IMG/VR virus record: IMGVR_UViG_3300032242_002454
Coordinates: 124,001 to 188,000 of that record
Direction: 5' to 3' (one strand)
DNA: 64,000 bases
Shown: positions 16,114-50,768 of the stretch, one piece after another
Layout of the letters: each line of letters opens with the position of its first letter
How positions within the stretch are numbered: position 1 is the first letter of the stretch
Program-made: the position numbers and the translations under genes
Notes under the pieces: model-generated
Seen by the model: the letters and a program-made list of their open reading frames with translations, nothing else
The model's database searches: none
Told to the model about the DNA's origin: nothing

Positions 16114-16518
16114 ATGGGTAAGGGTCAAAAAACTTGTGATAAATGTGGAGCTACCACAGGCCCAAGAGCTTATATGTGTCCTAAATGCAATGCTCCATTT
16201 GTTTTTAAGGCAAAGAGCAAAGAAGCAAAGAACACGAAGATTATTCGTGACTTTAATTGGAAAGAACTGGTAAAGGGAGATCGTATCAGAGTTGGTGGAG
16301 GCCCATACTTTGTATCCAAGGGAGATTTTGTTCCTATGGGTTATAGGGGTCGTTTTGTTGTGGAGGGTCTTGACCATGATGGAATTAAAGCATGGGGGCT
16401 AGACAAGCATCAAGGTTTTTGTCATATCTATATGGGGCCAGATATTCAGAACAAAGAAACTGGCGTATGGAAGATTAAACATAAGCTTATGAAACTCAAA
16501 CAAAAAGTGGAGGCGTAA
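16114..16518 (+). CDS. zinc-ribbon protein
   Basis: KTCDKCG...CPKC double CxxC; AGGAG RBS. Confidence 0.7.
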   Translation: MGKGQKTCDKCGATTGPRAYMCPKCNAPFVFKAKSKEAKNTKIIRDFNWKELVKGDRIRVGGGPYFVSKGDFVPMGYRGRFVVEGLDHDGIKAWGLDKHQGFCHIYMGPDIQNKETGVWKIKHKLMKLKQKVEA

Positions 16519-16802
16519 TGTCTCTTACACAGGAACAACGGGATCAGATTAATAGGCTCATAGATTACCGTGATGAGATGGTAAGTAGTTTATTTCATAT
16601 TGAGCGTATTCTTAAAACATATTTTCCAGAAGAATTTGAAAGAGCTATCCAGTTTTATCTGCCTCAAATTACCACTGCTCTTTATGAGGATAAAAAGTGG
16701 CTAAGTAGAGGCGAGTATAGTTTGCAGAACACTATTGACAATCTGATAGAGCGGTGTAAAACGATAGACAGTGGCGACAAGAATATCAATAAGTATCTCT
16801 AA
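16518..16802 (+). CDS. hypothetical protein
   Basis: ORF track. Confidence 0.65.
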   Translation: MSLTQEQRDQINRLIDYRDEMVSSLFHIERILKTYFPEEFERAIQFYLPQITTALYEDKKWLSRGEYSLQNTIDNLIERCKTIDSGDKNINKYL

Positions 16803-16817
16803 TTTGGAAAGACTATT

Positions 16818-17189
16818 ATGGAAACCTATAGTATTATTGATCTTGAGGGATATGCTAAGGCTATGAGAGATGGTGCCGCATCTTCTTTTGAAAAAGACTA
16901 CACAGAAAATCTTGATGATTTCATCACTATTGAGCAAGTAATCAATCTTATCAAGAAAAATAATCTTGGTTTGGATGAGGACGGGAACTACATTATTAAC
17001 TCTAATATTTTTGATGAAATGTTTGGGGAGATTAGGGACTGGCTTTATGGTGTTGGACTTTCTAAGTTGGCAGCAAAAGGCTTTGTAGATTGTGCATGGG
17101 ATGATGAAGCTAATGAGATGGTATTCTGGTTAGCTAATAAAGACAAGACTAATATTCCAGCAAAACCATCAGTAGATAATGATGACTGA
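16818..17189 (+). CDS. hypothetical protein, paralog family A
   Basis: C-terminal SKLAAKGFVDCAWDDEANEMVFW. Confidence 0.75.
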   Translation: METYSIIDLEGYAKAMRDGAASSFEKDYTENLDDFITIEQVINLIKKNNLGLDEDGNYIINSNIFDEMFGEIRDWLYGVGLSKLAAKGFVDCAWDDEANEMVFWLANKDKTNIPAKPSVDNDD

Positions 17190-17553
17190 ATACTACAAAG
17201 TTAAAAACATCAAATTGTTTGCTAAAAGTATCAGAAAGAATGTTGCCCTTTGTTTCCCCAAATCTTATTCTGCTCAAATAGATGAGTTGATTTCAGTTGG
17301 TCAAACAGAAAATCTAATAAGACAGTATGCTGAAATTTCTTCTAATGATGAATTTTTAATGAGTGAAGATAATTATAATCTGATATTTGACAATATTAAA
17401 GCTTGGCTATATAATAGTAGTCTAAGTAAGCTTGCATCTTCTGGAGAGATAGAGTGTGCATGGGATGATGAAATAAATGAAATGATCTTTTGGCACACAA
17501 AATCTTCAGAAAAATTCCATATTGCCTCTTGTTCTAGAAATAATTATGAGTAA
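17179..17553 (+). CDS. hypothetical protein, paralog family A
   Basis: C-terminal SKLASSGEIECAWDDEINEMIFW. Confidence 0.75.
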   Translation: MMTEYYKVKNIKLFAKSIRKNVALCFPKSYSAQIDELISVGQTENLIRQYAEISSNDEFLMSEDNYNLIFDNIKAWLYNSSLSKLASSGEIECAWDDEINEMIFWHTKSSEKFHIASCSRNNYE

Positions 17554-17709
17554 TCAAAACGAAATAAATGAACTAAAAAATCAAATACATGATTTAAAAG
17601 AATATCTATATTCTGATTTATGTAAGGCTTGTGGAGAGGCAGCATTATCTCTGGAGAAAATTAGCGAAAGATTAAATGAACTAGAGTCTCAACAAAATTC
17701 CTAAAGGTC

Positions 17710-17738
17710 TTGACAGTGGTTGGTCGATAGGATACAAT
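17710..17738 (+). promoter_or_regulatory. sigma70-type promoter (class I) driving the tRNA/tmRNA locus
   Basis: TTGACA-17-TACAAT, spacer TCGATA. Confidence 0.85.
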
Positions 17739-17751
17739 AGAAAGACAATAC

Positions 17752-17824
17752 GGGGCGTTCGTCTAATGGTCTAAGACGCTAGTCTTATTAACTAGCTAAG
17801 GGAGTTCGATTCTCTCACGCCCTA
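17752..17824 (+). tRNA. tRNA-Ile (anticodon UAU), atypical U37
   Basis: Acceptor GGGGCGT/ACGCCCT+A; D stem GTCT/AGAC; anticodon stem CTAGT/ACTAG with loop CT-TAT-TA; T arm GGGAG-TTCGATT-CTCTC. Confidence 0.8.
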
Positions 17825-17864
17825 CTTTTGCTTTAAGTATTCGATTCTTGATTGAAAGCAAGTA

Positions 17865-18065
17865 ATGAAACTACAGCCACTAACAGTAATTTTTGCTGGA
17901 TTATTTCTAGTATCACTAGGATTTAATATTCTATTGACTATACAGGTAAAAAAACTAGCTAATAAGCCTCCCAGAATTATTATAGAAAGAACACCAGAAA
18001 TTCATATCAAACCAAAAGTTTGGGGGTATACTAAAGAATGGGCTAGTAAAGGTATCGACAGGTAA
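17865..18065 (+). CDS. small single-TM protein whose 3' end overlaps tmRNA
   Basis: Hydrophobic helix LTVIFAGLFLVSLGFNILLTI; last 8 codons and stop lie inside tmRNA. Confidence 0.55.
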   Translation: MKLQPLTVIFAGLFLVSLGFNILLTIQVKKLANKPPRIIIERTPEIHIKPKVWGYTKEWASKGIDR

Positions 18066-18389
18066 AATAGATATAGATGGCATCGACTGGTTAATCGACC
18101 GGCCAGTTTAAAAGTCGATTAAAATTGTTAATTGGCGAAGTAACTCTCGCTCTCGCTGCCTAATTAATTAGGTAATGAGTGGGGCGGCATGAGCCTTATT
18201 ACCAAATCATGCTGACTCCGATATTCGGATATGGTAGTCTTACCAGACATAAATAAGACTGATGATTGTACTCAATCTGACGCAGATAATTCTGATAGCT
18301 TTGTTGGTAGTGTGATAACAACCAACTAACGATGTAGAAGTTTGTATTGATGTTTATTCTGGACGGCAGTTCGACTCTGCCCTAGTCCA
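18040..18389 (+). ncRNA. ssrA: tmRNA; tag peptide (A)GEVTLALAA
   Basis: Acceptor GGGCTAG/CTAGTCC+A with G3:U70 and A73; 5' GG-N-ATCGAC; T arm GGCAG-TTCGACT-CTGCC; internal ORF 18134..18163 ending LALAA-TAA. Confidence 0.93.
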
Positions 18390-18443
18390 CTTAATTTAGC
18401 TCTTGTTCATATTTTGGTGTAAAGATATGTACAGGAAATAACT

Positions 18444-18977
18444 ATGAAAACTAATACATCTGTTGATTGTGCATATTGTGGTAAAAAAGTAGTAAAATTA
18501 GCTTCAGAAGTAAAAAGACGAAGGAAAGTAGGAAAAGATAAGTTTTATTGTAATAATAATTGTTCTGGTAAGCATAAGGCTGTTTATGTTATGCCATATA
18601 AGGATAATTTCAAAAAAACAAAATATACTAGACAACCAGATAAGTTTGCTAATTTTAGATGGTATATAAAAAATGTCATCAAAAATTCTAAAAAACGTAA
18701 TCAGGAATATGATATAGATCTAGAATATTTGAATCAATTATGGGAAAACCAACTTGGAGTCTGTCCATTTACTAAACAGAAATTAGAACTCAGAACTCAC
18801 AGCTATAAAAATAAGAAACATCCATATTCAGCTTCTTTAGATAGAATAGATAATACAAAAGGCTATATCAAAGGGAATATAAGATTTGTTGCTTTGATAT
18901 TCAATTACGCAAAGAACACATTTAACGATCAACAAGTTTTAGATTTTTGTCAAAACACAGTTTTAAGTATATCATGA
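18444..18977 (+). mobile_element. free-standing HNH-type (His-Me finger) endonuclease
   Basis: N-terminal CAYC...YCNNNC; C-terminal CPFT...SLDRIDNTKGYIKGNIRFV. Confidence 0.7.
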
Positions 18978-19540
18978 TAAATCCTAATGACGTAATTTTA
19001 CATACTATAGATGCAAAATTTACACAACTTATAATCTCTAATGCTAAAAAAGCAGAGATTGGAGGAAAATCTCAAATTAGAAATTCTAGTAAAAGATTAT
19101 CTAATTTAGCAGAAGATCAGTTGGTCGGTCAAATATCTACATATTGTGGATCAATGATACTAACTGGTTCTCCAGAAGGATATATTCAAGCAAGAGATAA
19201 AGCAAATGCTACTCCTTTGGCTGGAGATAATGGACTAGATATAGTTGGTCTACCTAATGTGGATATTAAAGGTAGTTTGATGAGGTATTCTAATAATCCC
19301 CTAAATTACAGACTATTAGTTAGACCAAAAGAAAGACACGAAAACTGGATTTATGTATTAGCATTAGTTCCAAAAGAAAGACCGTATAAAACTTATCTTG
19401 TGGGATGGGCTAATGACAATGATCTTCCATCAGAACCATATAATGGAGAGATAATATCTTTACATGGTGCATATGTTATTGAGGCTAGAAACTTAAGAAA
19501 AATTGAAGAATTAATTTCTCTTCAACATAATTATGTCTAG
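18974..19540 (+). CDS. hypothetical protein, possible PD-(D/E)XK fold
   Basis: LDIVGLPNVDIKGS pattern; weak. Confidence 0.45.
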   Translation: MINPNDVILHTIDAKFTQLIISNAKKAEIGGKSQIRNSSKRLSNLAEDQLVGQISTYCGSMILTGSPEGYIQARDKANATPLAGDNGLDIVGLPNVDIKGSLMRYSNNPLNYRLLVRPKERHENWIYVLALVPKERPYKTYLVGWANDNDLPSEPYNGEIISLHGAYVIEARNLRKIEELISLQHNYV

Positions 19541-19958
19541 AAAAATTTGCATTTACTGTGGTAAAAGGAAAAATGCCAAGTCTTTTGCTAGACATATTGG
19601 ACATAAAGATAATCTGGACAGTAGATGCAGAAAGTGCGTTAAACAACATACTAAGATTAGAAATAAACTAAGGAAAAAGGCTCCTCAAAAGCCAGATGGT
19701 TGTGAGTGTTGTTTTTGTAGTCCAGATAAATGGCACCTAGATCATGACCATGTTTATCATACCTTTAGGGGATGGTTATGTGAAACTTGTAATATAGGGA
19801 TAGGAAAATTAGGAGATAATTTAGAAGGTATTGTTGCTGCTTTGAAATATTTATCAGTAAGAAGTAAGGTTGAAGATCAAGCTGTGCTAAATCACATTAT
19901 TCAAGGCGTGGTTTTTTCTTTAAACCATTTGCTAGAGAAAAGACGAAATGATGCTTGA
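19533..19958 (+). CDS. recombination endonuclease VII-like protein
   Basis: CECC...HLDHDH...RGWLCETCNIGIGKLGDN. Confidence 0.88.
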   Translation: MSRKICIYCGKRKNAKSFARHIGHKDNLDSRCRKCVKQHTKIRNKLRKKAPQKPDGCECCFCSPDKWHLDHDHVYHTFRGWLCETCNIGIGKLGDNLEGIVAALKYLSVRSKVEDQAVLNHIIQGVVFSLNHLLEKRRNDA

Positions 19959-43574: not shown

Positions 43575-44005
43575 GTATAGATTTTTTACAAGATTTTCCT
43601 ATTAAAGTAGGACTATCTGCCATAGAGGGTAGAGGTATCTTTTCTACTAAAGAAATTAAAGAAGGAGATCTTATAGAAAGATGCCCTATGGTTCCTTTGG
43701 CTTTTAGATCTAGATATCATTCAGATCCTCAAATATATAAGTATTTGTATTCTCAACCAACTTGTCCATGTAATGAATGCAAGGTTCATGGTTTTAAATT
43801 TTATATGGTATTAGGATATGGAATGCTTTATAATCATCAAGATGATCCTAACACAGAATGGCAATTTGATTTTCCTAATCTAGTAGCAGACATTATGGCT
43901 ATAAAAAATATTCCAGCAGGAAATGAAATTTTTGTAGATTATGGCACCAAATATTTTAATGATCAACCAAAAATAGAAAATAAAGATAATGCAAAAAATA
44001 ATTAA
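43571..44005 (+). CDS. SET-domain protein (copy 2)
   Basis: EGRGIFS, YNHQDDPN, EIFVDY. Confidence 0.9.
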   Translation: MSIDFLQDFPIKVGLSAIEGRGIFSTKEIKEGDLIERCPMVPLAFRSRYHSDPQIYKYLYSQPTCPCNECKVHGFKFYMVLGYGMLYNHQDDPNTEWQFDFPNLVADIMAIKNIPAGNEIFVDYGTKYFNDQPKIENKDNAKNN

Positions 44006-45113
44006 TGAAATTAAGCTTGATTTTGATGATGTTCTTATCAAACCCAAAAGATCAGCTTTAAATAGTAGATCTGAGGTAACTTTAGTTAGAGAATTTAATT
44101 TTTCTAATTCAACAAGAAAATTGTCTTGTGTGCCAATTATGGTGGCTAATATGGATACTACTGGAACTTTTAGTATGACTGATCCAGTCTGTTCAGCACA
44201 GAGCATAGTGTGTTTACACAAGCATTATTCTATAGAACAGTTGACATCTTTTTATTCTACTGATACTAATATAGATAAAGATCTTGTTTTTTATTCTACG
44301 GGAACGTCTGCAAAAGATCTTGAAAAACTAAAAGAGGTTTTTAACTCATTACTTTATATAGGCAAAAAAGTTCCTAATGTTTGTATTGATGTTGCAAATG
44401 GTTATAGTGAAAAATTTGTAAAAATAACCAGTCATATTCGTGGACTATATCCAGATATTGTAATTATGGCTGGCAATGTAGTAACCCCAGAAATGGTTGA
44501 AGAATTAATACTCCATGGCAGAGTGGATATTGTTAAAGTAGGAATAGGATCAGGCTCAGTCTGCACTACTAGACTAAAAACTGGAATAGGCTATCCTCAA
44601 TTGGCAGCAGTAATGGAATGTACCGATGCTGCTCATGGATTAGGTGGTCATATTTGTTCTGATGGTGGATGCAAGATAGTTGGAGATGTTTGTAAAGCAT
44701 TTGGTGCTAATGCAGATTTTGTAATGCTAGGTAGTATGTTTGCTGGTACTGATGAATGTGAAGGAGAATGGGAATATGAGTTTAAATGTAAAAGAGCTGG
44801 CTTAACATCTGAATTTTGGCAACCATTTAACCCCGGTTATGAAACAGAAAAGAAAAAAACTAAACTTAAGTTCTATGGTATGAGTTCTAAAAACGCTATG
44901 GATAAATATCATAATGGGATTGCAAACTATAGAACTAGCGAGGGAAAATGCGTTACTATTCCTTACAAAGACAAAGCAGAAGTAATCCTACAAGATATTC
45001 TTGGTGGTATTAGAAGCGCTTGCACTTACGTAGGAGCTTCTAAAATTAAGGATTTTGGCAAAAAAACTACTTTTATTCAGGTTAACAATACTCATAATAG
45101 GATTTTTGAATGA
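43989..45113 (+). CDS. guaC: GMP reductase
   Basis: LDFDDVLIKP, ANMD, DVANG, AGNV, GIGSGSVCTTR, SDGG, GSMFAG, FYGMSS. Confidence 0.93.
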   Translation: MQKIINEIKLDFDDVLIKPKRSALNSRSEVTLVREFNFSNSTRKLSCVPIMVANMDTTGTFSMTDPVCSAQSIVCLHKHYSIEQLTSFYSTDTNIDKDLVFYSTGTSAKDLEKLKEVFNSLLYIGKKVPNVCIDVANGYSEKFVKITSHIRGLYPDIVIMAGNVVTPEMVEELILHGRVDIVKVGIGSGSVCTTRLKTGIGYPQLAAVMECTDAAHGLGGHICSDGGCKIVGDVCKAFGANADFVMLGSMFAGTDECEGEWEYEFKCKRAGLTSEFWQPFNPGYETEKKKTKLKFYGMSSKNAMDKYHNGIANYRTSEGKCVTIPYKDKAEVILQDILGGIRSACTYVGASKIKDFGKKTTFIQVNNTHNRIFE

Positions 45114-46174
45114 ATATTAATTTATATGCTCCAATAGGAGTAACAGGCTATGGTAATGTGGCCTTTAATTTACTGAAACAGCTTGTTAAACAAGATCATA
45201 ATGTTTGCTTAACTCCAATGGGCAATCCAAAAGTAGAATCAGAGGAAGATTTAAATTTAATCCACCACGCTGTTGGTTTGGGCTCAAGTATTGATTATAA
45301 TGCTGCTTGTATTAAAATTTGGCATCAATTCGATTTACTAACTAGATCTGGTAATGGAAAATATTTAGCATATCCTTTTTTTGAAATAGACACTTTTAAT
45401 ACTCTAGAAAAGCATCATTTAGGATTTCCAGATCAATTAATAGCTAGTAGTGAATGGGCTAAGAATGTTTTATTAGATAATGGCATTAAACAAGAAATTG
45501 GTATTGTACATTTGGGTGTTGATAATACTATTTTTTATCCTAGAGAATTGACAACAAAAAGACCTCAAAATTTTATTTTTATCACAATAGGAAAGTGGGA
45601 AGTTCGCAAGTCGCACGATGTTATTATAGAATGTTTTAATAAAGCATTTTCTAATCAAGATAATGTTGAGCTTTGGATGGTCACACATAATCCATTTTTG
45701 AATGAAACACAAGAAAAAGAATGGTTATCATTAGTTAATATCTCAAATCTTAAAAACAAAATTAAAGTTTTCCCAAGATTACCTAGTCAAGAAAATTTAG
45801 CAGAAGTTTTGTCCTACGCTGACTGTGGATTATATGTTTCCAGAGCGGAAGGATGGAATTTAGAAATACTTGAAACTATGGCAATGAATAAACCAGTTAT
45901 AGTAACAAATTATTCTGCCCATACAGAATATTGTAATTCAAAAAATTCTTATTTGGTCGATATATCAGATAAAGAATTAGCTAATGATGGTAAATGGTTT
46001 CATGGAGAGGGTAATTGGGCTAAGATTGGCGAAAAAGAAAAAGATCAAATTATTGAACACATGAGATATGTGTATTCCAATAAAATTAACACCAATCCAG
46101 AAGGTATACAAACAGCACAAAATTTTACTTGGGAAAATTCGGCCAAGCAATTAGTTAGGTGTATAGAAAAATAA
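45110..46174 (+). CDS. glycosyltransferase, GT-B fold (GT4-like)
   Basis: GKWEVRK, SRAEGWNLEILETMAMNKPVI. Confidence 0.88.
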   Translation: MNINLYAPIGVTGYGNVAFNLLKQLVKQDHNVCLTPMGNPKVESEEDLNLIHHAVGLGSSIDYNAACIKIWHQFDLLTRSGNGKYLAYPFFEIDTFNTLEKHHLGFPDQLIASSEWAKNVLLDNGIKQEIGIVHLGVDNTIFYPRELTTKRPQNFIFITIGKWEVRKSHDVIIECFNKAFSNQDNVELWMVTHNPFLNETQEKEWLSLVNISNLKNKIKVFPRLPSQENLAEVLSYADCGLYVSRAEGWNLEILETMAMNKPVIVTNYSAHTEYCNSKNSYLVDISDKELANDGKWFHGEGNWAKIGEKEKDQIIEHMRYVYSNKINTNPEGIQTAQNFTWENSAKQLVRCIEK

Positions 46175-48333: not shown

Positions 48334-48915
48334 ATGGAAAAAGAATTCGACAGTCTGTCTGCGTATATTACTTTAGCTAAAAAAATTATATCCAAGTTTG
48401 CTCCAACATTTTATAGTAATCTTCGTCAAGAATTACTATCTAATGAGGATGCTATAGCAGATATAGCTTCTGCTATTATGATTGGAGATTGGAGATGGGA
48501 TGAAAATAGATCAGGCTTTAATGGCAAGTCCAAGACTAAATATTCCTATAGAAATCAATGTGGTATTTGGGCGATTAAAACCTATCTTTCTAATAAATAT
48601 AGAAAGTGCAATACTCATTATTCTATAGATGCCACAGATGTCAATGATGTTAATTTTTCAGATAATATTAGTGATAAAGAAGAGTATGATCCTTCTCTTT
48701 TGGCTGAGAAAGAAGAATACAATGATGCTCTAAAATCTAATATAAATAACATTCTTAGTTGTGGTATTATTTCTGATAAGCAAAGAGATCAGATTAAACA
48801 GTATTATTTTGAAGAAAAAACACTGTCAGAGATCGGTAGAGATTTTGGAGTAACAAGAGAAGCAGTTAGACAAAATATTCAGAAGGGTCTTTCTAAAATC
48901 AGAGAATATGTATAA
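48334..48915 (+). CDS. RNA polymerase sigma factor (sigma70 family, regions 2+4)
   Basis: Region 4 HTH KTLSEIGRDFGVTREAVRQNIQKGLSKIR; region-2-like WDENR...KYSYRNQCGIWAI. Confidence 0.82.
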   Translation: MEKEFDSLSAYITLAKKIISKFAPTFYSNLRQELLSNEDAIADIASAIMIGDWRWDENRSGFNGKSKTKYSYRNQCGIWAIKTYLSNKYRKCNTHYSIDATDVNDVNFSDNISDKEEYDPSLLAEKEEYNDALKSNINNILSCGIISDKQRDQIKQYYFEEKTLSEIGRDFGVTREAVRQNIQKGLSKIREYV

Positions 48916-50090: not shown

Positions 50091-50768
50091 ATGGTAATAG
50101 CCTCTCCTAATGATAGTGAAATCAATGATATCCATAATTTTAATATAGATATCAAAAATAGAGAGGTATATCTACACTCATATATAGATGGTGCAGATGA
50201 AGGTGGTGTTGATTATAGGTCAGCTGTTGTATTTGAAAAAAATATCAGATATCTAAATACACTATCTTCCGAACCCATATTAGTTCATATGCACTTGCCG
50301 GGAGGAGAATGGCAAGACTGCTTAGGAATATATGATACTATTAGATTTTCTAAATCTAGAATTGTTGTACTAGCTTATGCAAAAGTAGAGTCCTCAAGTA
50401 GCGTCATATTCCAAGCTGCACCACTAAGGATTCTAACTCCAAATGCTACTATGCTAATTCATTATGGTTCATTTAGTATGGATAGTGAACACTCTAAGGC
50501 TGCTGCTAGTTCTATCAAATGGAATGAACAAGAGTGTGATAAGATGATTGAAATTTTTACCGACAGATGTATGGAAAGTGAACTAGCTAAACAAAAGAAT
50601 TGGAAGAAAATGATGGCCAGAAAACACATCACTTCCCAATTGGCTAATAAGTGTGATTGGATTTTAACTTCTAACGAAGCAGTAGAGTATGGGTTTGCAG
50701 ACGGTGTATTAGGTAGTAAGAAATACCCCAGTATTGAACTACTTAAAACACACAGAATTAAAAAATGA
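50091..50768 (+). CDS. ClpP-like protease subunit
   Basis: HLPGG...GIYDTI; Ser (KVESS), His (LIHYG), Asp (CDWILT); EAVEYGFAD. Confidence 0.82.
   Translation: MVIASPNDSEINDIHNFNIDIKNREVYLHSYIDGADEGGVDYRSAVVFEKNIRYLNTLSSEPILVHMHLPGGEWQDCLGIYDTIRFSKSRIVVLAYAKVESSSSVIFQAAPLRILTPNATMLIHYGSFSMDSEHSKAAASSIKWNEQECDKMIEIFTDRCMESELAKQKNWKKMMARKHITSQLANKCDWILTSNEAVEYGFADGVLGSKKYPSIELLKTHRIKK

What the first reader, a model, noticed from the sequence alone, without database searches (positions are those of the whole stretch)
18040..18389. Phage-encoded tmRNA with its own degradation tag
The alanyl-tRNA-like domain is complete (G3:U70, A73, no encoded CCA) and the tag ORF reads GEVTLALAA*. The phage also encodes a ClpP-like subunit (50091), so it may supply both tagging and degrading halves of trans-translation, or redirect them. 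No smpB is in this window. Phage tmRNAs are known but functionally little studied.
Basis: partly seen in the sequence, partly recalled or inferred. Interest (0 to 1): 0.6.

Follow-up and report, generated by a model that had tools for sequence, protein, structure and literature searches.

The report
Jumbo-phage tmRNA gene, Bacteroidota-type tag
A 205-kb freshwater jumbo phage carries a complete, evolutionarily conserved tmRNA (ribosome-rescue RNA) gene with a Bacteroidota-style degradation tag; this is a real but already familiar kind of phage gene, and the idea that the phage also supplies the matching protease is not supported.

Summary
Window 18040-18389 (+) is a full one-piece tmRNA gene: Rfam RF00023 scores 88.6 bits (cut-off 47). 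It has G3:U70, discriminator A73, no encoded CCA, resume codon GGC and tag GEVTLALAA-stop.

It is not chance and not a relic. The gene sits in the same place in at least 62 of 80 related viral contigs, giving 35 distinct sequences. In the curated structure, 30 of 43 pairs show compensatory changes and 97% of cells are paired, against 75% in shuffles. The last five tag residues, LALAA, are invariant apart from one Phe at the first of them, despite synonymous codon changes.

The host genome is a complete 204.6-kb phage with terminal repeats, from lake metagenomes. Neither it nor five complete relatives encode SmpB, so the RNA must work with host SmpB, AlaRS and the CCA-adding enzyme.

The tag is not idiosyncratic. 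Its Gly start, 9-aa length, ALAA end and missing CCA match Bacteroidota tmRNAs, not those of Pseudomonadota or the third phylum sampled.

The ClpP-like protein is a divergent peptidase far below curated ClpP cut-offs. It lies far from the head genes, and the phage has no Clp unfoldase, so the 'both halves' idea is unsupported.

One puzzle remains: the phage's dense sigma-70-consensus promoters do not look Bacteroidota-like.

Phage tmRNAs are well documented, so this is a new member of a known kind.

The parts
17710..17738 (+). Sigma-70-type promoter-like site (TTGACA-17-TACAAT, 11 of 12), 13 nt upstream of tRNA-Ile. It is the likely start of a tRNA-Ile plus tmRNA precursor transcript.
   Evidence: It is one of 51 such near-consensus sites in the genome, against 12 expected. 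No terminator-like site lies between it and the tmRNA. Co-transcription is inferred, not shown.
17752..17825 (+). tRNA-Ile (anticodon UAU), with no encoded CCA.
   Evidence: ARAGORN; Rfam tRNA at 55.1 bits; 3' flank read.
18040..18389 (+). tmRNA (ssrA) gene, from mature 5' G1 to discriminator A73 (350 nt; CCA is added after transcription).
   Evidence: Rfam RF00023 at 88.6 bits, E 4.6e-33. Conserved in at least 62 related loci. Covariation.
18040..18046 (+). Acceptor stem 5' strand (GGGCUAG), pairing with 18382-18388. G3:U70 is the alanine identity pair.
   Evidence: G:U is invariant in 27 of 27 sequences, while pairs 4-7 covary (CG/GC, GC/UA/CG, AU/CG/GC, GC/UA).
18059..18085 (+). 5' strand of the long helix H2 (three segments), pairing with 18330-18361.
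   Evidence: Helices 2-4: 12 of 19 pairs show changes on both sides, and 95-100% of cells are paired.
18086..18120 (+). Pseudoknot PK1. Stem 1 is 18086-18090 with 18103-18107. Stem 2 is 18093-18099 with 18114-18120.
   Evidence: Helices 5 and 6. Stem 1 covaries at two pairs (CG to GC, GC to AU). Stem 2 covaries at 7 of 7 pairs.
18134..18163 (+). Tag reading frame: resume codon GGC, then GAA GUA ACU CUC GCU CUC GCU GCC, then UAA. It encodes GEVTLALAA, so the appended peptide is A-GEVTLALAA.
   Evidence: ARAGORN reads homologous tags in 14 relatives. ALAA is invariant in every sequence. The preceding residue is Leu encoded by CTC, CTT or TTA in all but one sequence, which has Phe.
18164..18329 (+). 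Region after the tag (H5 hairpin around the stop codon, and the PK2-PK4 region). The exact pairing is not resolved here.
   Evidence: Rfam alignment posterior is low here, and the two phage subclades cannot be aligned reliably in this stretch.
18365..18381 (+). T-arm (GGCAG, loop UUCGACU, CUGCC).
   Evidence: Helix 7 has 5 of 5 pairs with compensatory changes.
18444..18977 (+). HNH / endonuclease VII-like homing endonuclease gene, inserted immediately 3' of the tmRNA. It is a neighbour, not part of the tmRNA.
   Evidence: PHROG endonuclease families. A DNA contig of run X2 joins 18391 directly to 18968, so the gene is present in some genomes and absent in others.
50091..50768 (+). Divergent ClpP-superfamily serine peptidase (225 aa). 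No link to the tmRNA is shown.
   Evidence: PF00574 at 55.9 bits. PHROG head maturation protease. Aligns to PDB ClpPs at E 1e-8 with the triad positions aligned. Below all NCBIfam cut-offs.

Best explanation
Window 18040-18389 is a functional one-piece tmRNA gene carried by a lytic-looking 205-kb freshwater jumbo phage. It has been inherited vertically within a large clade of uncultured relatives.

Inferred mechanism:
- It is transcribed from a phage promoter, probably together with the upstream tRNA-Ile.
- Host RNase P and 3' processing enzymes trim it. The host CCA-adding enzyme completes it, since none of the phage's ten tRNA genes nor the tmRNA encodes CCA.
- Host AlaRS charges it with alanine through G3:U70.
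- Host SmpB and EF-Tu bring it to stalled ribosomes, because the phage has no smpB.
- Translation resumes at GGC and appends A-GEVTLALAA, whose ALAA end hands the truncated product to host proteases.

The likely benefit is extra ribosome-rescue capacity during infection, when host mRNA breakdown or RNA-cutting defences produce many non-stop messages.

Shown here: the gene's identity, its structure, selection on both the RNA folds and the tag peptide, the absence of SmpB, and the Bacteroidota-type features.

Inferred only: expression timing, charging, the SmpB partnership and the benefit to the phage.
For: Identity:
- Full-length Rfam hit at 88.6 bits.
- G3:U70, A73, the T-arm and the tag frame are read directly from the sequence.

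Conservation:
- 271 related contigs were found through the neighbouring ligase.
- The tmRNA is syntenic in at least 62 of the 80 fetched loci, with 35 distinct sequences.
- The phage copies form one clade with SH-aLRT 97.

Structure under selection:
- 34 of 56 RNAalifold pairs show compensatory changes.
- In the curated structure with PK1, 97.2% of cells are paired, against 75.5% in shuffles (0 of 500 reach it) and 37-42% when the partners are slid. 30 of 43 pairs have double changes.

Tag under peptide-level selection:
- All tags start with Gly and end in ALAA.
- The residue before ALAA is Leu in all but one sequence, using CTC, CTT or TTA; the Ala codons vary among GCT, GCC and GCA.

Dependence on the host:
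- No SmpB in this genome or in 5 complete relatives.
- No tRNA gene encodes CCA.

Transcription hints:
- Contigs from two lake metatranscriptome libraries lie inside the tmRNA (18062-18351).
- A near-consensus promoter lies upstream of tRNA-Ile, and no terminator lies between.

Precedent:
- tmRNAs were found in 402 of 18,146 phage genomes (PMC9004378), in huge phages (PMC7162821), and in mycobacteriophages and Bacillus phage G (PMC4131195).
Against: - No direct evidence of expression level, ends, charging or tagging. The RNA-library data are assembled contigs, which cannot exclude DNA carry-over.
- The gene is dispensable. One complete close relative (231 kb, ligase 88% identical) and one 152-kb relative have no tmRNA at all, and in the first the whole segment is replaced.
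- The PK2-PK4 region was not resolved.
- The host is unknown. The tmRNA looks Bacteroidota-like, but the promoter content does not, so compatibility with the real host's SmpB is assumed, not shown.
Confidence: 0.62

Rival explanations
1. Redirected or distinguishable tagging. The phage tmRNA is foreign to its real host's phylum (a Bacteroidota-type RNA in a phage of a host with canonical sigma-70 promoters). It therefore marks rescued chains with a tag different from the host's own. This could change their fate, or simply record a past cross-phylum host switch, as proposed for phage Melnitz.
For: - There are 51 near-consensus TTGACA/TATAAT promoters against 12.1 +/- 4.4 expected. 45 of them are co-oriented in the 100-172 kb block.
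- The Bacteroidota motif TAnnTTTG lies upstream of ssrA in 32% of sampled Bacteroidota but in none of the 35 phage copies.
- SD-like motifs occur upstream of 33% of ORFs against 8.6% in the background.
- Tag positions 2-5 differ from the common Bacteroidota GENNY.
- Precedent: Melnitz, in PMC9004378.
Against: - The ALAA degron is canonical and invariant, so degradation by ordinary Clp-type or other proteases is the simplest reading.
- Whether the host's sigma factor or another factor reads the promoters is untested; the one phage sigma gene found is ECF-like, and ECF factors normally use a different consensus.
- Absence of CCA in all phage tRNA genes and the tmRNA fits a Bacteroidota-like host as well as any other.
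- The host was not identified.
Confidence: 0.15
2. Decoy or inhibitor. The RNA titrates host SmpB or blocks host trans-translation rather than carrying it out, as suggested for the TLD-only molecule of mycobacteriophage DS6A.
For: - The phage lacks SmpB, so its tmRNA competes with the host's tmRNA for SmpB.
- The DS6A precedent is described in PMC4131195 and PMC11915505.
Against: A decoy needs only the tRNA-like domain. Here PK1, the resume context and the tag frame with its ALAA end are all conserved, with covariation and synonymous changes, across 35 distinct sequences. That argues the message part is used.
Confidence: 0.08
3. Self-contained tagging and degradation module. The phage tmRNA marks proteins and the phage ClpP-like peptidase at 50091-50768 degrades them.
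For: A ClpP-family protein with Ser/His/Asp positions retained exists in the same genome. It does not sit in the head-gene module.
Against: - The two genes are 32 kb apart.
- All NCBIfam ClpP models are far below their cut-offs (56.7 against 228 bits), and PHROGs rank head maturation proteases first.
- There is no Clp unfoldase in the phage, and ClpP alone does not degrade tagged proteins (established knowledge of the ClpXP and ClpAP systems).
- No co-occurrence test was done.
Confidence: 0.05
4. Passenger or relic. The gene is a recently captured host gene, or an integration-site remnant, with no role for the phage.
For: The gene is absent from two relatives. It lies in a variable segment next to mobile HNH endonuclease genes.
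Against: - It is full length, not a 3' fragment.
- The phage copies are monophyletic, split into two deep subclades and far from any sampled bacterial tmRNA.
- There is strong purifying selection on structure and tag.
- No integrase lies nearby.
Confidence: 0.05

Closest known systems
Phage-encoded one-piece tmRNAs (mycobacteriophage Bxz1 group, Bacillus phage G, huge phages, and many jumbo phages found by ARAGORN surveys)
   Same: A complete ssrA gene in a large phage genome that also carries tRNA genes. The presumed role is to support translation in the infected cell (PMC4131195, PMC7162821, PMC9004378).
   Different: - This one has Bacteroidota-type features.
- It belongs to an uncultured freshwater clade with no close cultured relative: the best ligase identity in GenBank phages is 33%, and blastn of the tmRNA finds no match.
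- ARAGORN, the tool those surveys used, misses it.
- Some huge phages carry SmpB as well; this clade does not.
Bacteroidota chromosomal tmRNA (for example the Chitinophagales and Flavobacterium ssrA genes sampled here)
   Same: - Resume codons GGC GAA or GGC AAY.
- 9-aa tags of the form G-x-x-x-[Y/F/L]-A-[L/M]-A-A, such as GNTQLAMAA and GNTQYAMAA.
- A TAA stop followed by a similar AT-rich hairpin in Ferruginibacter.
- A 3' end ...UCCA without encoded CCA.
- The best profile similarity among the three phyla sampled.
   Different: - The phage RNA is shorter (350 nt against 360-400).
- It starts GGGC in most copies rather than GGGG.
- It has Leu rather than Tyr at tag position 5.
- It lacks the TAnnTTTG promoter motif upstream.
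- It forms its own long-branched clade.
Methylophilales phage Melnitz and pelagimyophage tmRNAs
   Same: An aquatic phage tmRNA that is common in its phage group but not universal. Its phylogenetic affinity has been used to discuss host history (PMC9004378).
   Different: Those are two-piece, permuted tmRNAs with a glutamine riboswitch. This one is a standard one-piece tmRNA, and no riboswitch was detected by Rfam in the window.
Cellulophaga phage Calle (a cultured phage of a Bacteroidota host with 20 tRNAs and one tmRNA)
   Same: A tmRNA gene in a phage linked to Bacteroidota (PMC8776804).
   Different: It is a 73-kb podovirus. Its tmRNA could not be compared here, because blastn with the phage tmRNA and with a Flavobacterium tmRNA found no counterpart in the phage collection.

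Membership tests
tmRNA (Rfam RF00023, one-piece ssrA) | Covariance-model score above the curated gathering threshold over the full model | tested here: met
   88.6 bits against 47, model positions 1-374. Relatives score 73-114 bits.
tmRNA (Rfam RF00023, one-piece ssrA) | tRNA-like domain: a 7-bp acceptor stem joining the 5' and 3' ends, G3:U70, a discriminator A, and a T-arm | tested here: met
   Read directly from the sequence. G:U is invariant in 27 of 27 sequences. The other acceptor pairs and all 5 T-stem pairs covary.
tmRNA (Rfam RF00023, one-piece ssrA) | A long helix H2 connecting the tRNA-like domain to the body, and pseudoknot PK1 just upstream of the resume codon | tested here: met
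   Helices 2-6 are 95-100% paired. Compensatory changes occur in 12 of 19 H2 pairs and 9 of 12 PK1 pairs.
tmRNA (Rfam RF00023, one-piece ssrA) | An internal short reading frame without a start codon, ending in a hydrophobic Ala-rich degron and a stop codon | tested here: met
   GGC...GCC UAA encodes GEVTLALAA. 12 tag variants, all ending in ALAA, with synonymous codon changes.
tmRNA (Rfam RF00023, one-piece ssrA) | Pseudoknots PK2-PK4 downstream of the tag | tested here: inconclusive
   The Rfam alignment has low posterior probability there, and the subclades cannot be aligned. Candidate stems seen by eye were not tested.
tmRNA (Rfam RF00023, one-piece ssrA) | Expressed as a stable RNA, alanylated, bound by SmpB, and tagging nascent chains | not testable with these tools
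   The only evidence is metatranscriptome contigs lying within 18062-18351, which do not prove transcription.
Bacteroidota-type tmRNA | Gly resume codon, 9-aa tag ending A-[L/M]-A-A, and a 3' end without encoded CCA | tested here: met
   - 20 of 22 sampled Chitinophagales tags start with Gly, and 20 of 22 genes lack CCA.
- Pseudomonadota: 21 of 21 tags start with AN or AR, and all genes encode CCA.
- Third phylum: only one of 20 tags starts with Gly, and all differ from the phage pattern; many are long tags of the AK/AN...FAPAVA type.
- Firmicutes, Fusobacteriota and other phyla could not be sampled.
Bacteroidota-type tmRNA | Placement inside Bacteroidota in a tmRNA tree | tested here: inconclusive
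   The phage clade lies on the Bacteroidota side of a split supported at 98. Only two bacterial phyla are in the tree, and the phage branch is long.
Bacteroidota-type tmRNA | A Bacteroidota housekeeping promoter (TAnnTTTG) upstream | tested here: not met
   0 of 35 phage copies have it, against 16 of 50 Bacteroidota ssrA genes.
ClpP (ATP-dependent Clp protease proteolytic subunit), for the ORF at 50091-50768 | Ser-His-Asp triad in the ClpP fold | tested here: met
   The phmmer alignment to solved ClpPs places Ser, His and Asp at the catalytic positions. PF00574 scores 55.9 bits.
ClpP (ATP-dependent Clp protease proteolytic subunit), for the ORF at 50091-50768 | Score above the curated family cut-off for bona fide ClpP | tested here: not met
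   The best NCBIfam ClpP model scores 56.7 bits against a cut-off of 228. TIGR00493 scores 23.9 against 308.6.
ClpP (ATP-dependent Clp protease proteolytic subunit), for the ORF at 50091-50768 | A partner Clp unfoldase (ClpX, ClpA or ClpC) | tested here: not met
   No AAA_2 family match over the cut-off in the phage genome; the best is 15.6 bits against 27. Use of a host unfoldase was not testable.
ClpP-related phage head maturation protease | Family score over the cut-off, and a position next to the portal, scaffold or capsid genes | tested here: not met
   NF045542 scores 43.7 bits against 120. PHROG head-maturation families rank first. However, the gene lies about 80 kb from the head and tail module.

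The most novel reading that the evidence does not exclude
The tmRNA is foreign to the phage's present host. A Bacteroidota-type tmRNA would then be maintained under selection in a phage clade whose dense sigma-70-consensus promoters point to a host outside Bacteroidota. In infected cells rescued chains would receive a tag unlike the host's own. That would be either a trace of a cross-phylum host jump or a way to separate phage-driven tagging from host quality control.
Probability: 0.15. Interest if true: 0.6.

Novelty: new member of a known kind. Interest (0 to 1): 0.33.

Why it matters
Phage tmRNAs are catalogued often but studied rarely. This case adds a large, abundant, uncultured freshwater jumbo-phage clade in which the gene is clearly under selection for both its RNA structure and its tag peptide, without a phage SmpB.

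That clade gives a natural comparative data set: 35 sequence variants, 12 tags, and natural loss in some members. It could be used to ask what a phage gains from its own ribosome-rescue RNA.

There is also a practical lesson. ARAGORN, the standard tool used in the published phage surveys, misses 60% of the clade, including this copy, so phage tmRNA frequencies from such surveys are underestimates.

The mismatch between a Bacteroidota-like tmRNA and E. coli-like promoters is a concrete, testable host-history question.

Tried and rejected
- **blastn of the tmRNA against 50,697 GenBank phage records:** no match. A Flavobacterium ssrA query also found no phage counterpart.
- **ARAGORN at a lowered threshold:** only obvious false positives inside coding regions.
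- **Host inference from the GuaC-like auxiliary gene:** uninformative. Bacteroidota and Gammaproteobacteria both match at 50-53% identity.
- **First tag pattern, with a variable gap:** too permissive. Pseudomonadota gave as many scattered matches as the reversed-pattern controls. Only the recurrent in-frame 30-nt class in Bacteroidota was meaningful, so I replaced this test with ARAGORN tag reading on unbiased Rfam-found tmRNAs.
- **The co-binned 'MAG' G004 as a candidate host:** rejected.
  - Its phylum has genomes of 0.7-1.2 Mb and long tags unlike the phage's.
  - Its own tmRNA and SmpB loci are 40-43% GC, against 33-35% for the phage-like contigs, so the phage-like contigs look like binning contaminants.
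- **Membership in the published bS21-encoding freshwater Bacteroidetes phages:** rejected, because this genome has no bS21.
- **Shine-Dalgarno usage:** ambiguous with naive start calls.
- **HK97-type capsid family search:** no hit. The head module was located only weakly, by PHROGs.
- **The tree:** it cannot name a donor, because only two bacterial phyla could be included. A third phylum was compared only by profile score and tags.
Full report
**What is there**

The Rfam tmRNA model (RF00023) matches window 18040-18392 on the + strand over its whole length, at 88.6 bits against a gathering score of 47, E 4.6e-33.
- The acceptor stem is GGGCUAG (18040-18046) paired with CUAGUCC (18382-18388), with G3:U70.
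- The discriminator A is at 18389, followed by CUU, so CCA is not encoded.
- The T-arm is at 18365-18381.
- The tag frame starts at GGC (18134-18136) and reads GEVTLALAA before UAA (18161-18163).

With the alanine carried by the charged RNA, the appended peptide would be A-GEVTLALAA. ARAGORN does not call this gene.

**Genomic setting**

The window is bases 124,001-188,000 of a 204,625-bp virus record with direct terminal repeats. It is rated complete and has 34.5% G+C.
- The genome has ten tRNA genes.
- A minus-strand structural block at about 17-96 kb holds giant ORFs of 2,679, 4,023 and 5,022 aa, plus tail-fibre, head-decoration and weak major-head matches.
- A plus-strand block holds small genes and replication and metabolism genes, and includes the tmRNA.
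- The tmRNA lies 215 nt downstream of a tRNA-Ile(UAU) gene. It is followed by two homing-endonuclease-like genes and an ATP-dependent DNA ligase.
- No cultured phage is close. The ligase reaches only 33% identity in GenBank phages, and blastn of the tmRNA finds nothing.
- Public runs that hold the locus are freshwater or lake metagenomes from 17 studies.

**Is it more than chance, and is it functional?**

Using the ligase as an anchor, 271 related viral contigs were found and 80 loci fetched, many from genomes of 190-244 kb.
- nhmmer and Rfam find the tmRNA upstream of the ligase in at least 62 of them, giving 35 distinct sequences.
- A 27-sequence alignment (A1) splits into two deep subclades.
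- RNAalifold finds compensatory changes in 34 of 56 predicted pairs.
- I then tested a curated structure: acceptor stem, three H2 segments, both stems of pseudoknot PK1, and the T-arm.
  - 97.2% of cells are standard pairs, against 75.5 +/- 0.9% in 500 shuffles (none reach it) and 37-42% when the 3' partners are slid by 1-3 columns.
  - 30 of 43 pairs show changes on both sides.
  - G3:U70 never varies, while the neighbouring acceptor pairs swap freely.
- The tag is conserved as a peptide.
  - There are twelve tag variants: GEVTLALAA, GEVSTLALAA, GEVTLTLALAA, GKTTLALAA, GKTSLALAA, GERTFALAA, GEVNLALAA, GETQLALAA, GTNQLALAA, GNNQLALAA, GANQLALAA and GVNQLALAA.
  - All start with Gly and end in ALAA.
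  - Leu at the fifth-from-last position is written CTC, CTT or TTA, and the Ala codons vary.
  - ARAGORN independently reads the same tags in the 14 relatives it detects.

This is a gene maintained by selection on both its fold and its message.

**Expression**

A near-consensus sigma-70-type promoter (TTGACA-17-TACAAT) lies 13 nt upstream of tRNA-Ile, and no terminator-like site lies between it and the tmRNA. A tRNA-Ile plus tmRNA precursor is therefore plausible.

Clade-A copies also share a TATACT hexamer 7 nt before G1.

Contigs from two lake metatranscriptome libraries lie within 18062-18351 and do not extend beyond the gene. A few other contigs from these libraries lie on neighbouring genes. 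Contigs cannot exclude DNA carry-over, so this is suggestive only.

**Dependence on the host**

SmpB is absent from this genome and from five complete relatives of 229-244 kb. None of the ten phage tRNA genes encodes CCA, and almost all are followed by TT. The tmRNA therefore needs host SmpB, AlaRS, EF-Tu, processing nucleases and the CCA-adding enzyme.

The gene is dispensable in nature. One complete relative of 231 kb (ligase 88% identical) and one 152-kb relative have no tmRNA anywhere. In the first, the whole segment holding tRNA-Ile, tmRNA and the endonuclease genes is replaced by unrelated DNA.

**Whose tag is it?**

I obtained bacterial genome handles through the phage's GuaC-like gene. 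I then sampled tmRNAs found by Rfam in three phyla.

| Group | Tags read | Tag form | Encoded CCA | Score against the phage profile |
|---|---|---|---|---|
| Bacteroidota: Chitinophagales sample, chosen without reference to tags | 22 | 20 start with Gly; 9 aa; G-[E/N/D]-x-x-[Y/F/L]-A-[L/M]-A-A | absent in 20 of 22 | median about 32 bits, maximum 62 |
| Bacteroidota: other genomes, found through the tag pattern | 26 (plus 2 named genomes) | mostly GENNYALAA | mostly absent | median about 33 bits, maximum 66 |
| Pseudomonadota | 21 | all start AN or AR; 10-13 aa (one of 18) | present in all | median 17 bits, maximum 38 |
| Third phylum (genomes of 0.7-1.2 Mb) | 20 | many long AK/AN...FAPAVA-type tags; only one starts with Gly; none like the phage's | present in 13 of 20 | median 21 bits, maximum 47 |

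Further points:
- GNTQLAMAA and GNTQYAMAA, the latter from a Ferruginibacter MAG, are close to the phage's clade-B tags. Ferruginibacter also shares the AT-rich hairpin after the stop codon and the ...UCCACUU 3' end.
- In a tree, the phage copies are one clade (SH-aLRT 97) on the Bacteroidota side of a split supported at 98. Only two bacterial phyla are in that tree and the phage branch is long.

So the tag is a variant of the Bacteroidota pattern with the canonical ALAA end, not a novel degron. Phyla I could not sample, such as Firmicutes and Fusobacteriota, also have Gly-start tags as far as I remember. That limits the claim.

**A conflict about the host**

The genome carries 51 sites matching TTGACA-N16-18-TATAAT at 11 or 12 of 12 positions, against 12.1 +/- 4.4 in resampled sequence. 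45 of them are on the + strand between 100 and 172 kb, co-oriented with the genes there.

The Bacteroidota housekeeping motif (TTTG ... TAnnTTTG, from my background knowledge) is barely enriched: 11 sites against 5.3 +/- 2.3. As a check on that background, TAnnTTTG lies just upstream of ssrA in 16 of 50 sampled Bacteroidota, 0 of 21 Pseudomonadota and 0 of 35 phage copies. SD-like motifs precede 33% of ORFs against 8.6% in the background.

These features look like a host with canonical promoter and SD usage. The tmRNA and the universal lack of encoded CCA look Bacteroidota-like.

The phage does encode a sigma-70/ECF-family factor at 48334-48915 (61.4 bits against a cut-off of 42.9), but ECF factors normally read a different consensus.

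I could not resolve this. It leaves open a cross-phylum origin of the tmRNA, as proposed for phage Melnitz (PMC9004378).

**The ClpP-like gene**

The ORF at 50091-50768 matches PF00574 at 55.9 bits. It aligns to solved ClpPs at E about 1e-8, with Ser, His and Asp at the catalytic positions.
- It is far below every curated NCBIfam cut-off: ClpP 56.7 against 228, and the ClpP-related head maturation protease 43.7 against 120.
- PHROGs rank head maturation proteases first.
- It sits about 80 kb from the head module, right after the sigma factor gene.
- The phage has no Clp unfoldase.

Nothing links it to the tmRNA. ClpP cannot degrade tagged proteins without an unfoldase (established knowledge of ClpXP and ClpAP). 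The 'both halves' idea is therefore unsupported, though a partnership with a host unfoldase is not excluded.

**Comparison with what is known**

Phage tmRNAs are well documented:
- Eight Bxz1-like mycobacteriophages, Bacillus phage G and the TLD-only DS6A molecule (PMC4131195).
- tmRNAs and SmpB in huge phages (PMC7162821).
- 402 of 18,146 phage genomes in an ARAGORN survey (PMC9004378).
- One in Cellulophaga phage Calle, which has a Bacteroidota host (PMC8776804).

This finding is therefore a new member of a known kind. What it adds:
- A large uncultured freshwater clade with strong comparative evidence of function.
- A Bacteroidota-type tag.
- No phage SmpB.
- Natural losses of the gene within the clade.
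- The fact that ARAGORN, the tool used in those surveys, misses 21 of the 35 distinct copies, including this one.

**Verdict**

The most likely mechanism is that the phage supplements host trans-translation during infection, using host SmpB and host proteases. My confidence is about 0.6 for the mechanism and about 0.9 for its being a functional tmRNA gene. Interest is moderate to low (0.33).

Noticed in passing
window 18392-18968 (HNH ORF 18444-18977): The HNH / endonuclease VII-like gene immediately 3' of the tmRNA is a presence/absence polymorphism. A DNA contig in run X2 joins 18391 directly to 18968, skipping 576 bases. A second endonuclease VII-like gene follows at 19533-19958. The tmRNA 3' end may be a homing site.
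   Followed up: partly
G000 100-172 kb (window about -23,000 to 48,000), for example window 17710-17738: A dense array of near-perfect sigma-70 consensus promoters: 51 sites with at least 11 of 12 matches against 12 expected, 45 of them on the + strand. TATACT and TAGAAT are frequent -10 variants. This is at odds with a Bacteroidota host.
   Followed up: partly
window 48334-48915: A phage-encoded sigma-70/ECF-family sigma factor (TIGR02937, 61.4 bits against a cut-off of 42.9), directly upstream of the group of small genes that contains the ClpP-like ORF.
   Followed up: no
phage-clade tmRNAs in L005-L084: ARAGORN 1.2.41 detects only 14 of 35 distinct tmRNAs of this clade (40%). Copies with nearly the same sequence differ in whether they are called. 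Published phage tmRNA surveys rely on ARAGORN.
   Followed up: partly
- It contains at least two large contigs of this jumbo-phage clade, at 33-35% GC, one of them with a phage-type tmRNA.
- It also holds its own tmRNA and SmpB, at 40-43% GC.
- The phage-like contigs are likely binning contamination.
   Followed up: partly
window 17752-17825, and all ten tRNA genes of G000: A tRNA-Ile with anticodon UAU, which would read AUA directly. None of the ten phage tRNA genes encodes CCA, and nine are followed by TT.
   Followed up: no
window 17865-18065: A 66-aa ORF with a hydrophobic N-terminal segment is conserved at the protein level in part of clade A. In this genome it runs 26 nt into the tmRNA 5' end. 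In several relatives it stops just before the tmRNA, so the overlap is incidental.
   Followed up: partly
G636 (record of L047) and G637 (record of L064): Two relatives rated complete lack any tmRNA. In L047, window 16500-19950 (tRNA-Ile, tmRNA and the endonuclease genes) is replaced by about 1.8 kb of unrelated DNA.
   Followed up: partly
G000 17,642-75,090 (outside the window, minus strand): Giant ORFs of 2,679, 1,868, 1,443, 5,022 and 4,023 aa lie in the structural block. They were not annotated here.
   Followed up: no
window 43989-46174: Auxiliary genes: a GuaC/IMPDH-family GMP-reductase-like protein (PF00478, 204 bits; 50-53% identical to bacterial homologues) followed by a group-1 glycosyltransferase.
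   Followed up: partly
window 18141: A TTC insertion that turns GEVTLALAA into GEVSTLALAA is present in a metatranscriptome contig (X20) and a DNA contig (X2). Tag-length variants therefore co-occur in lakes.
   Followed up: no
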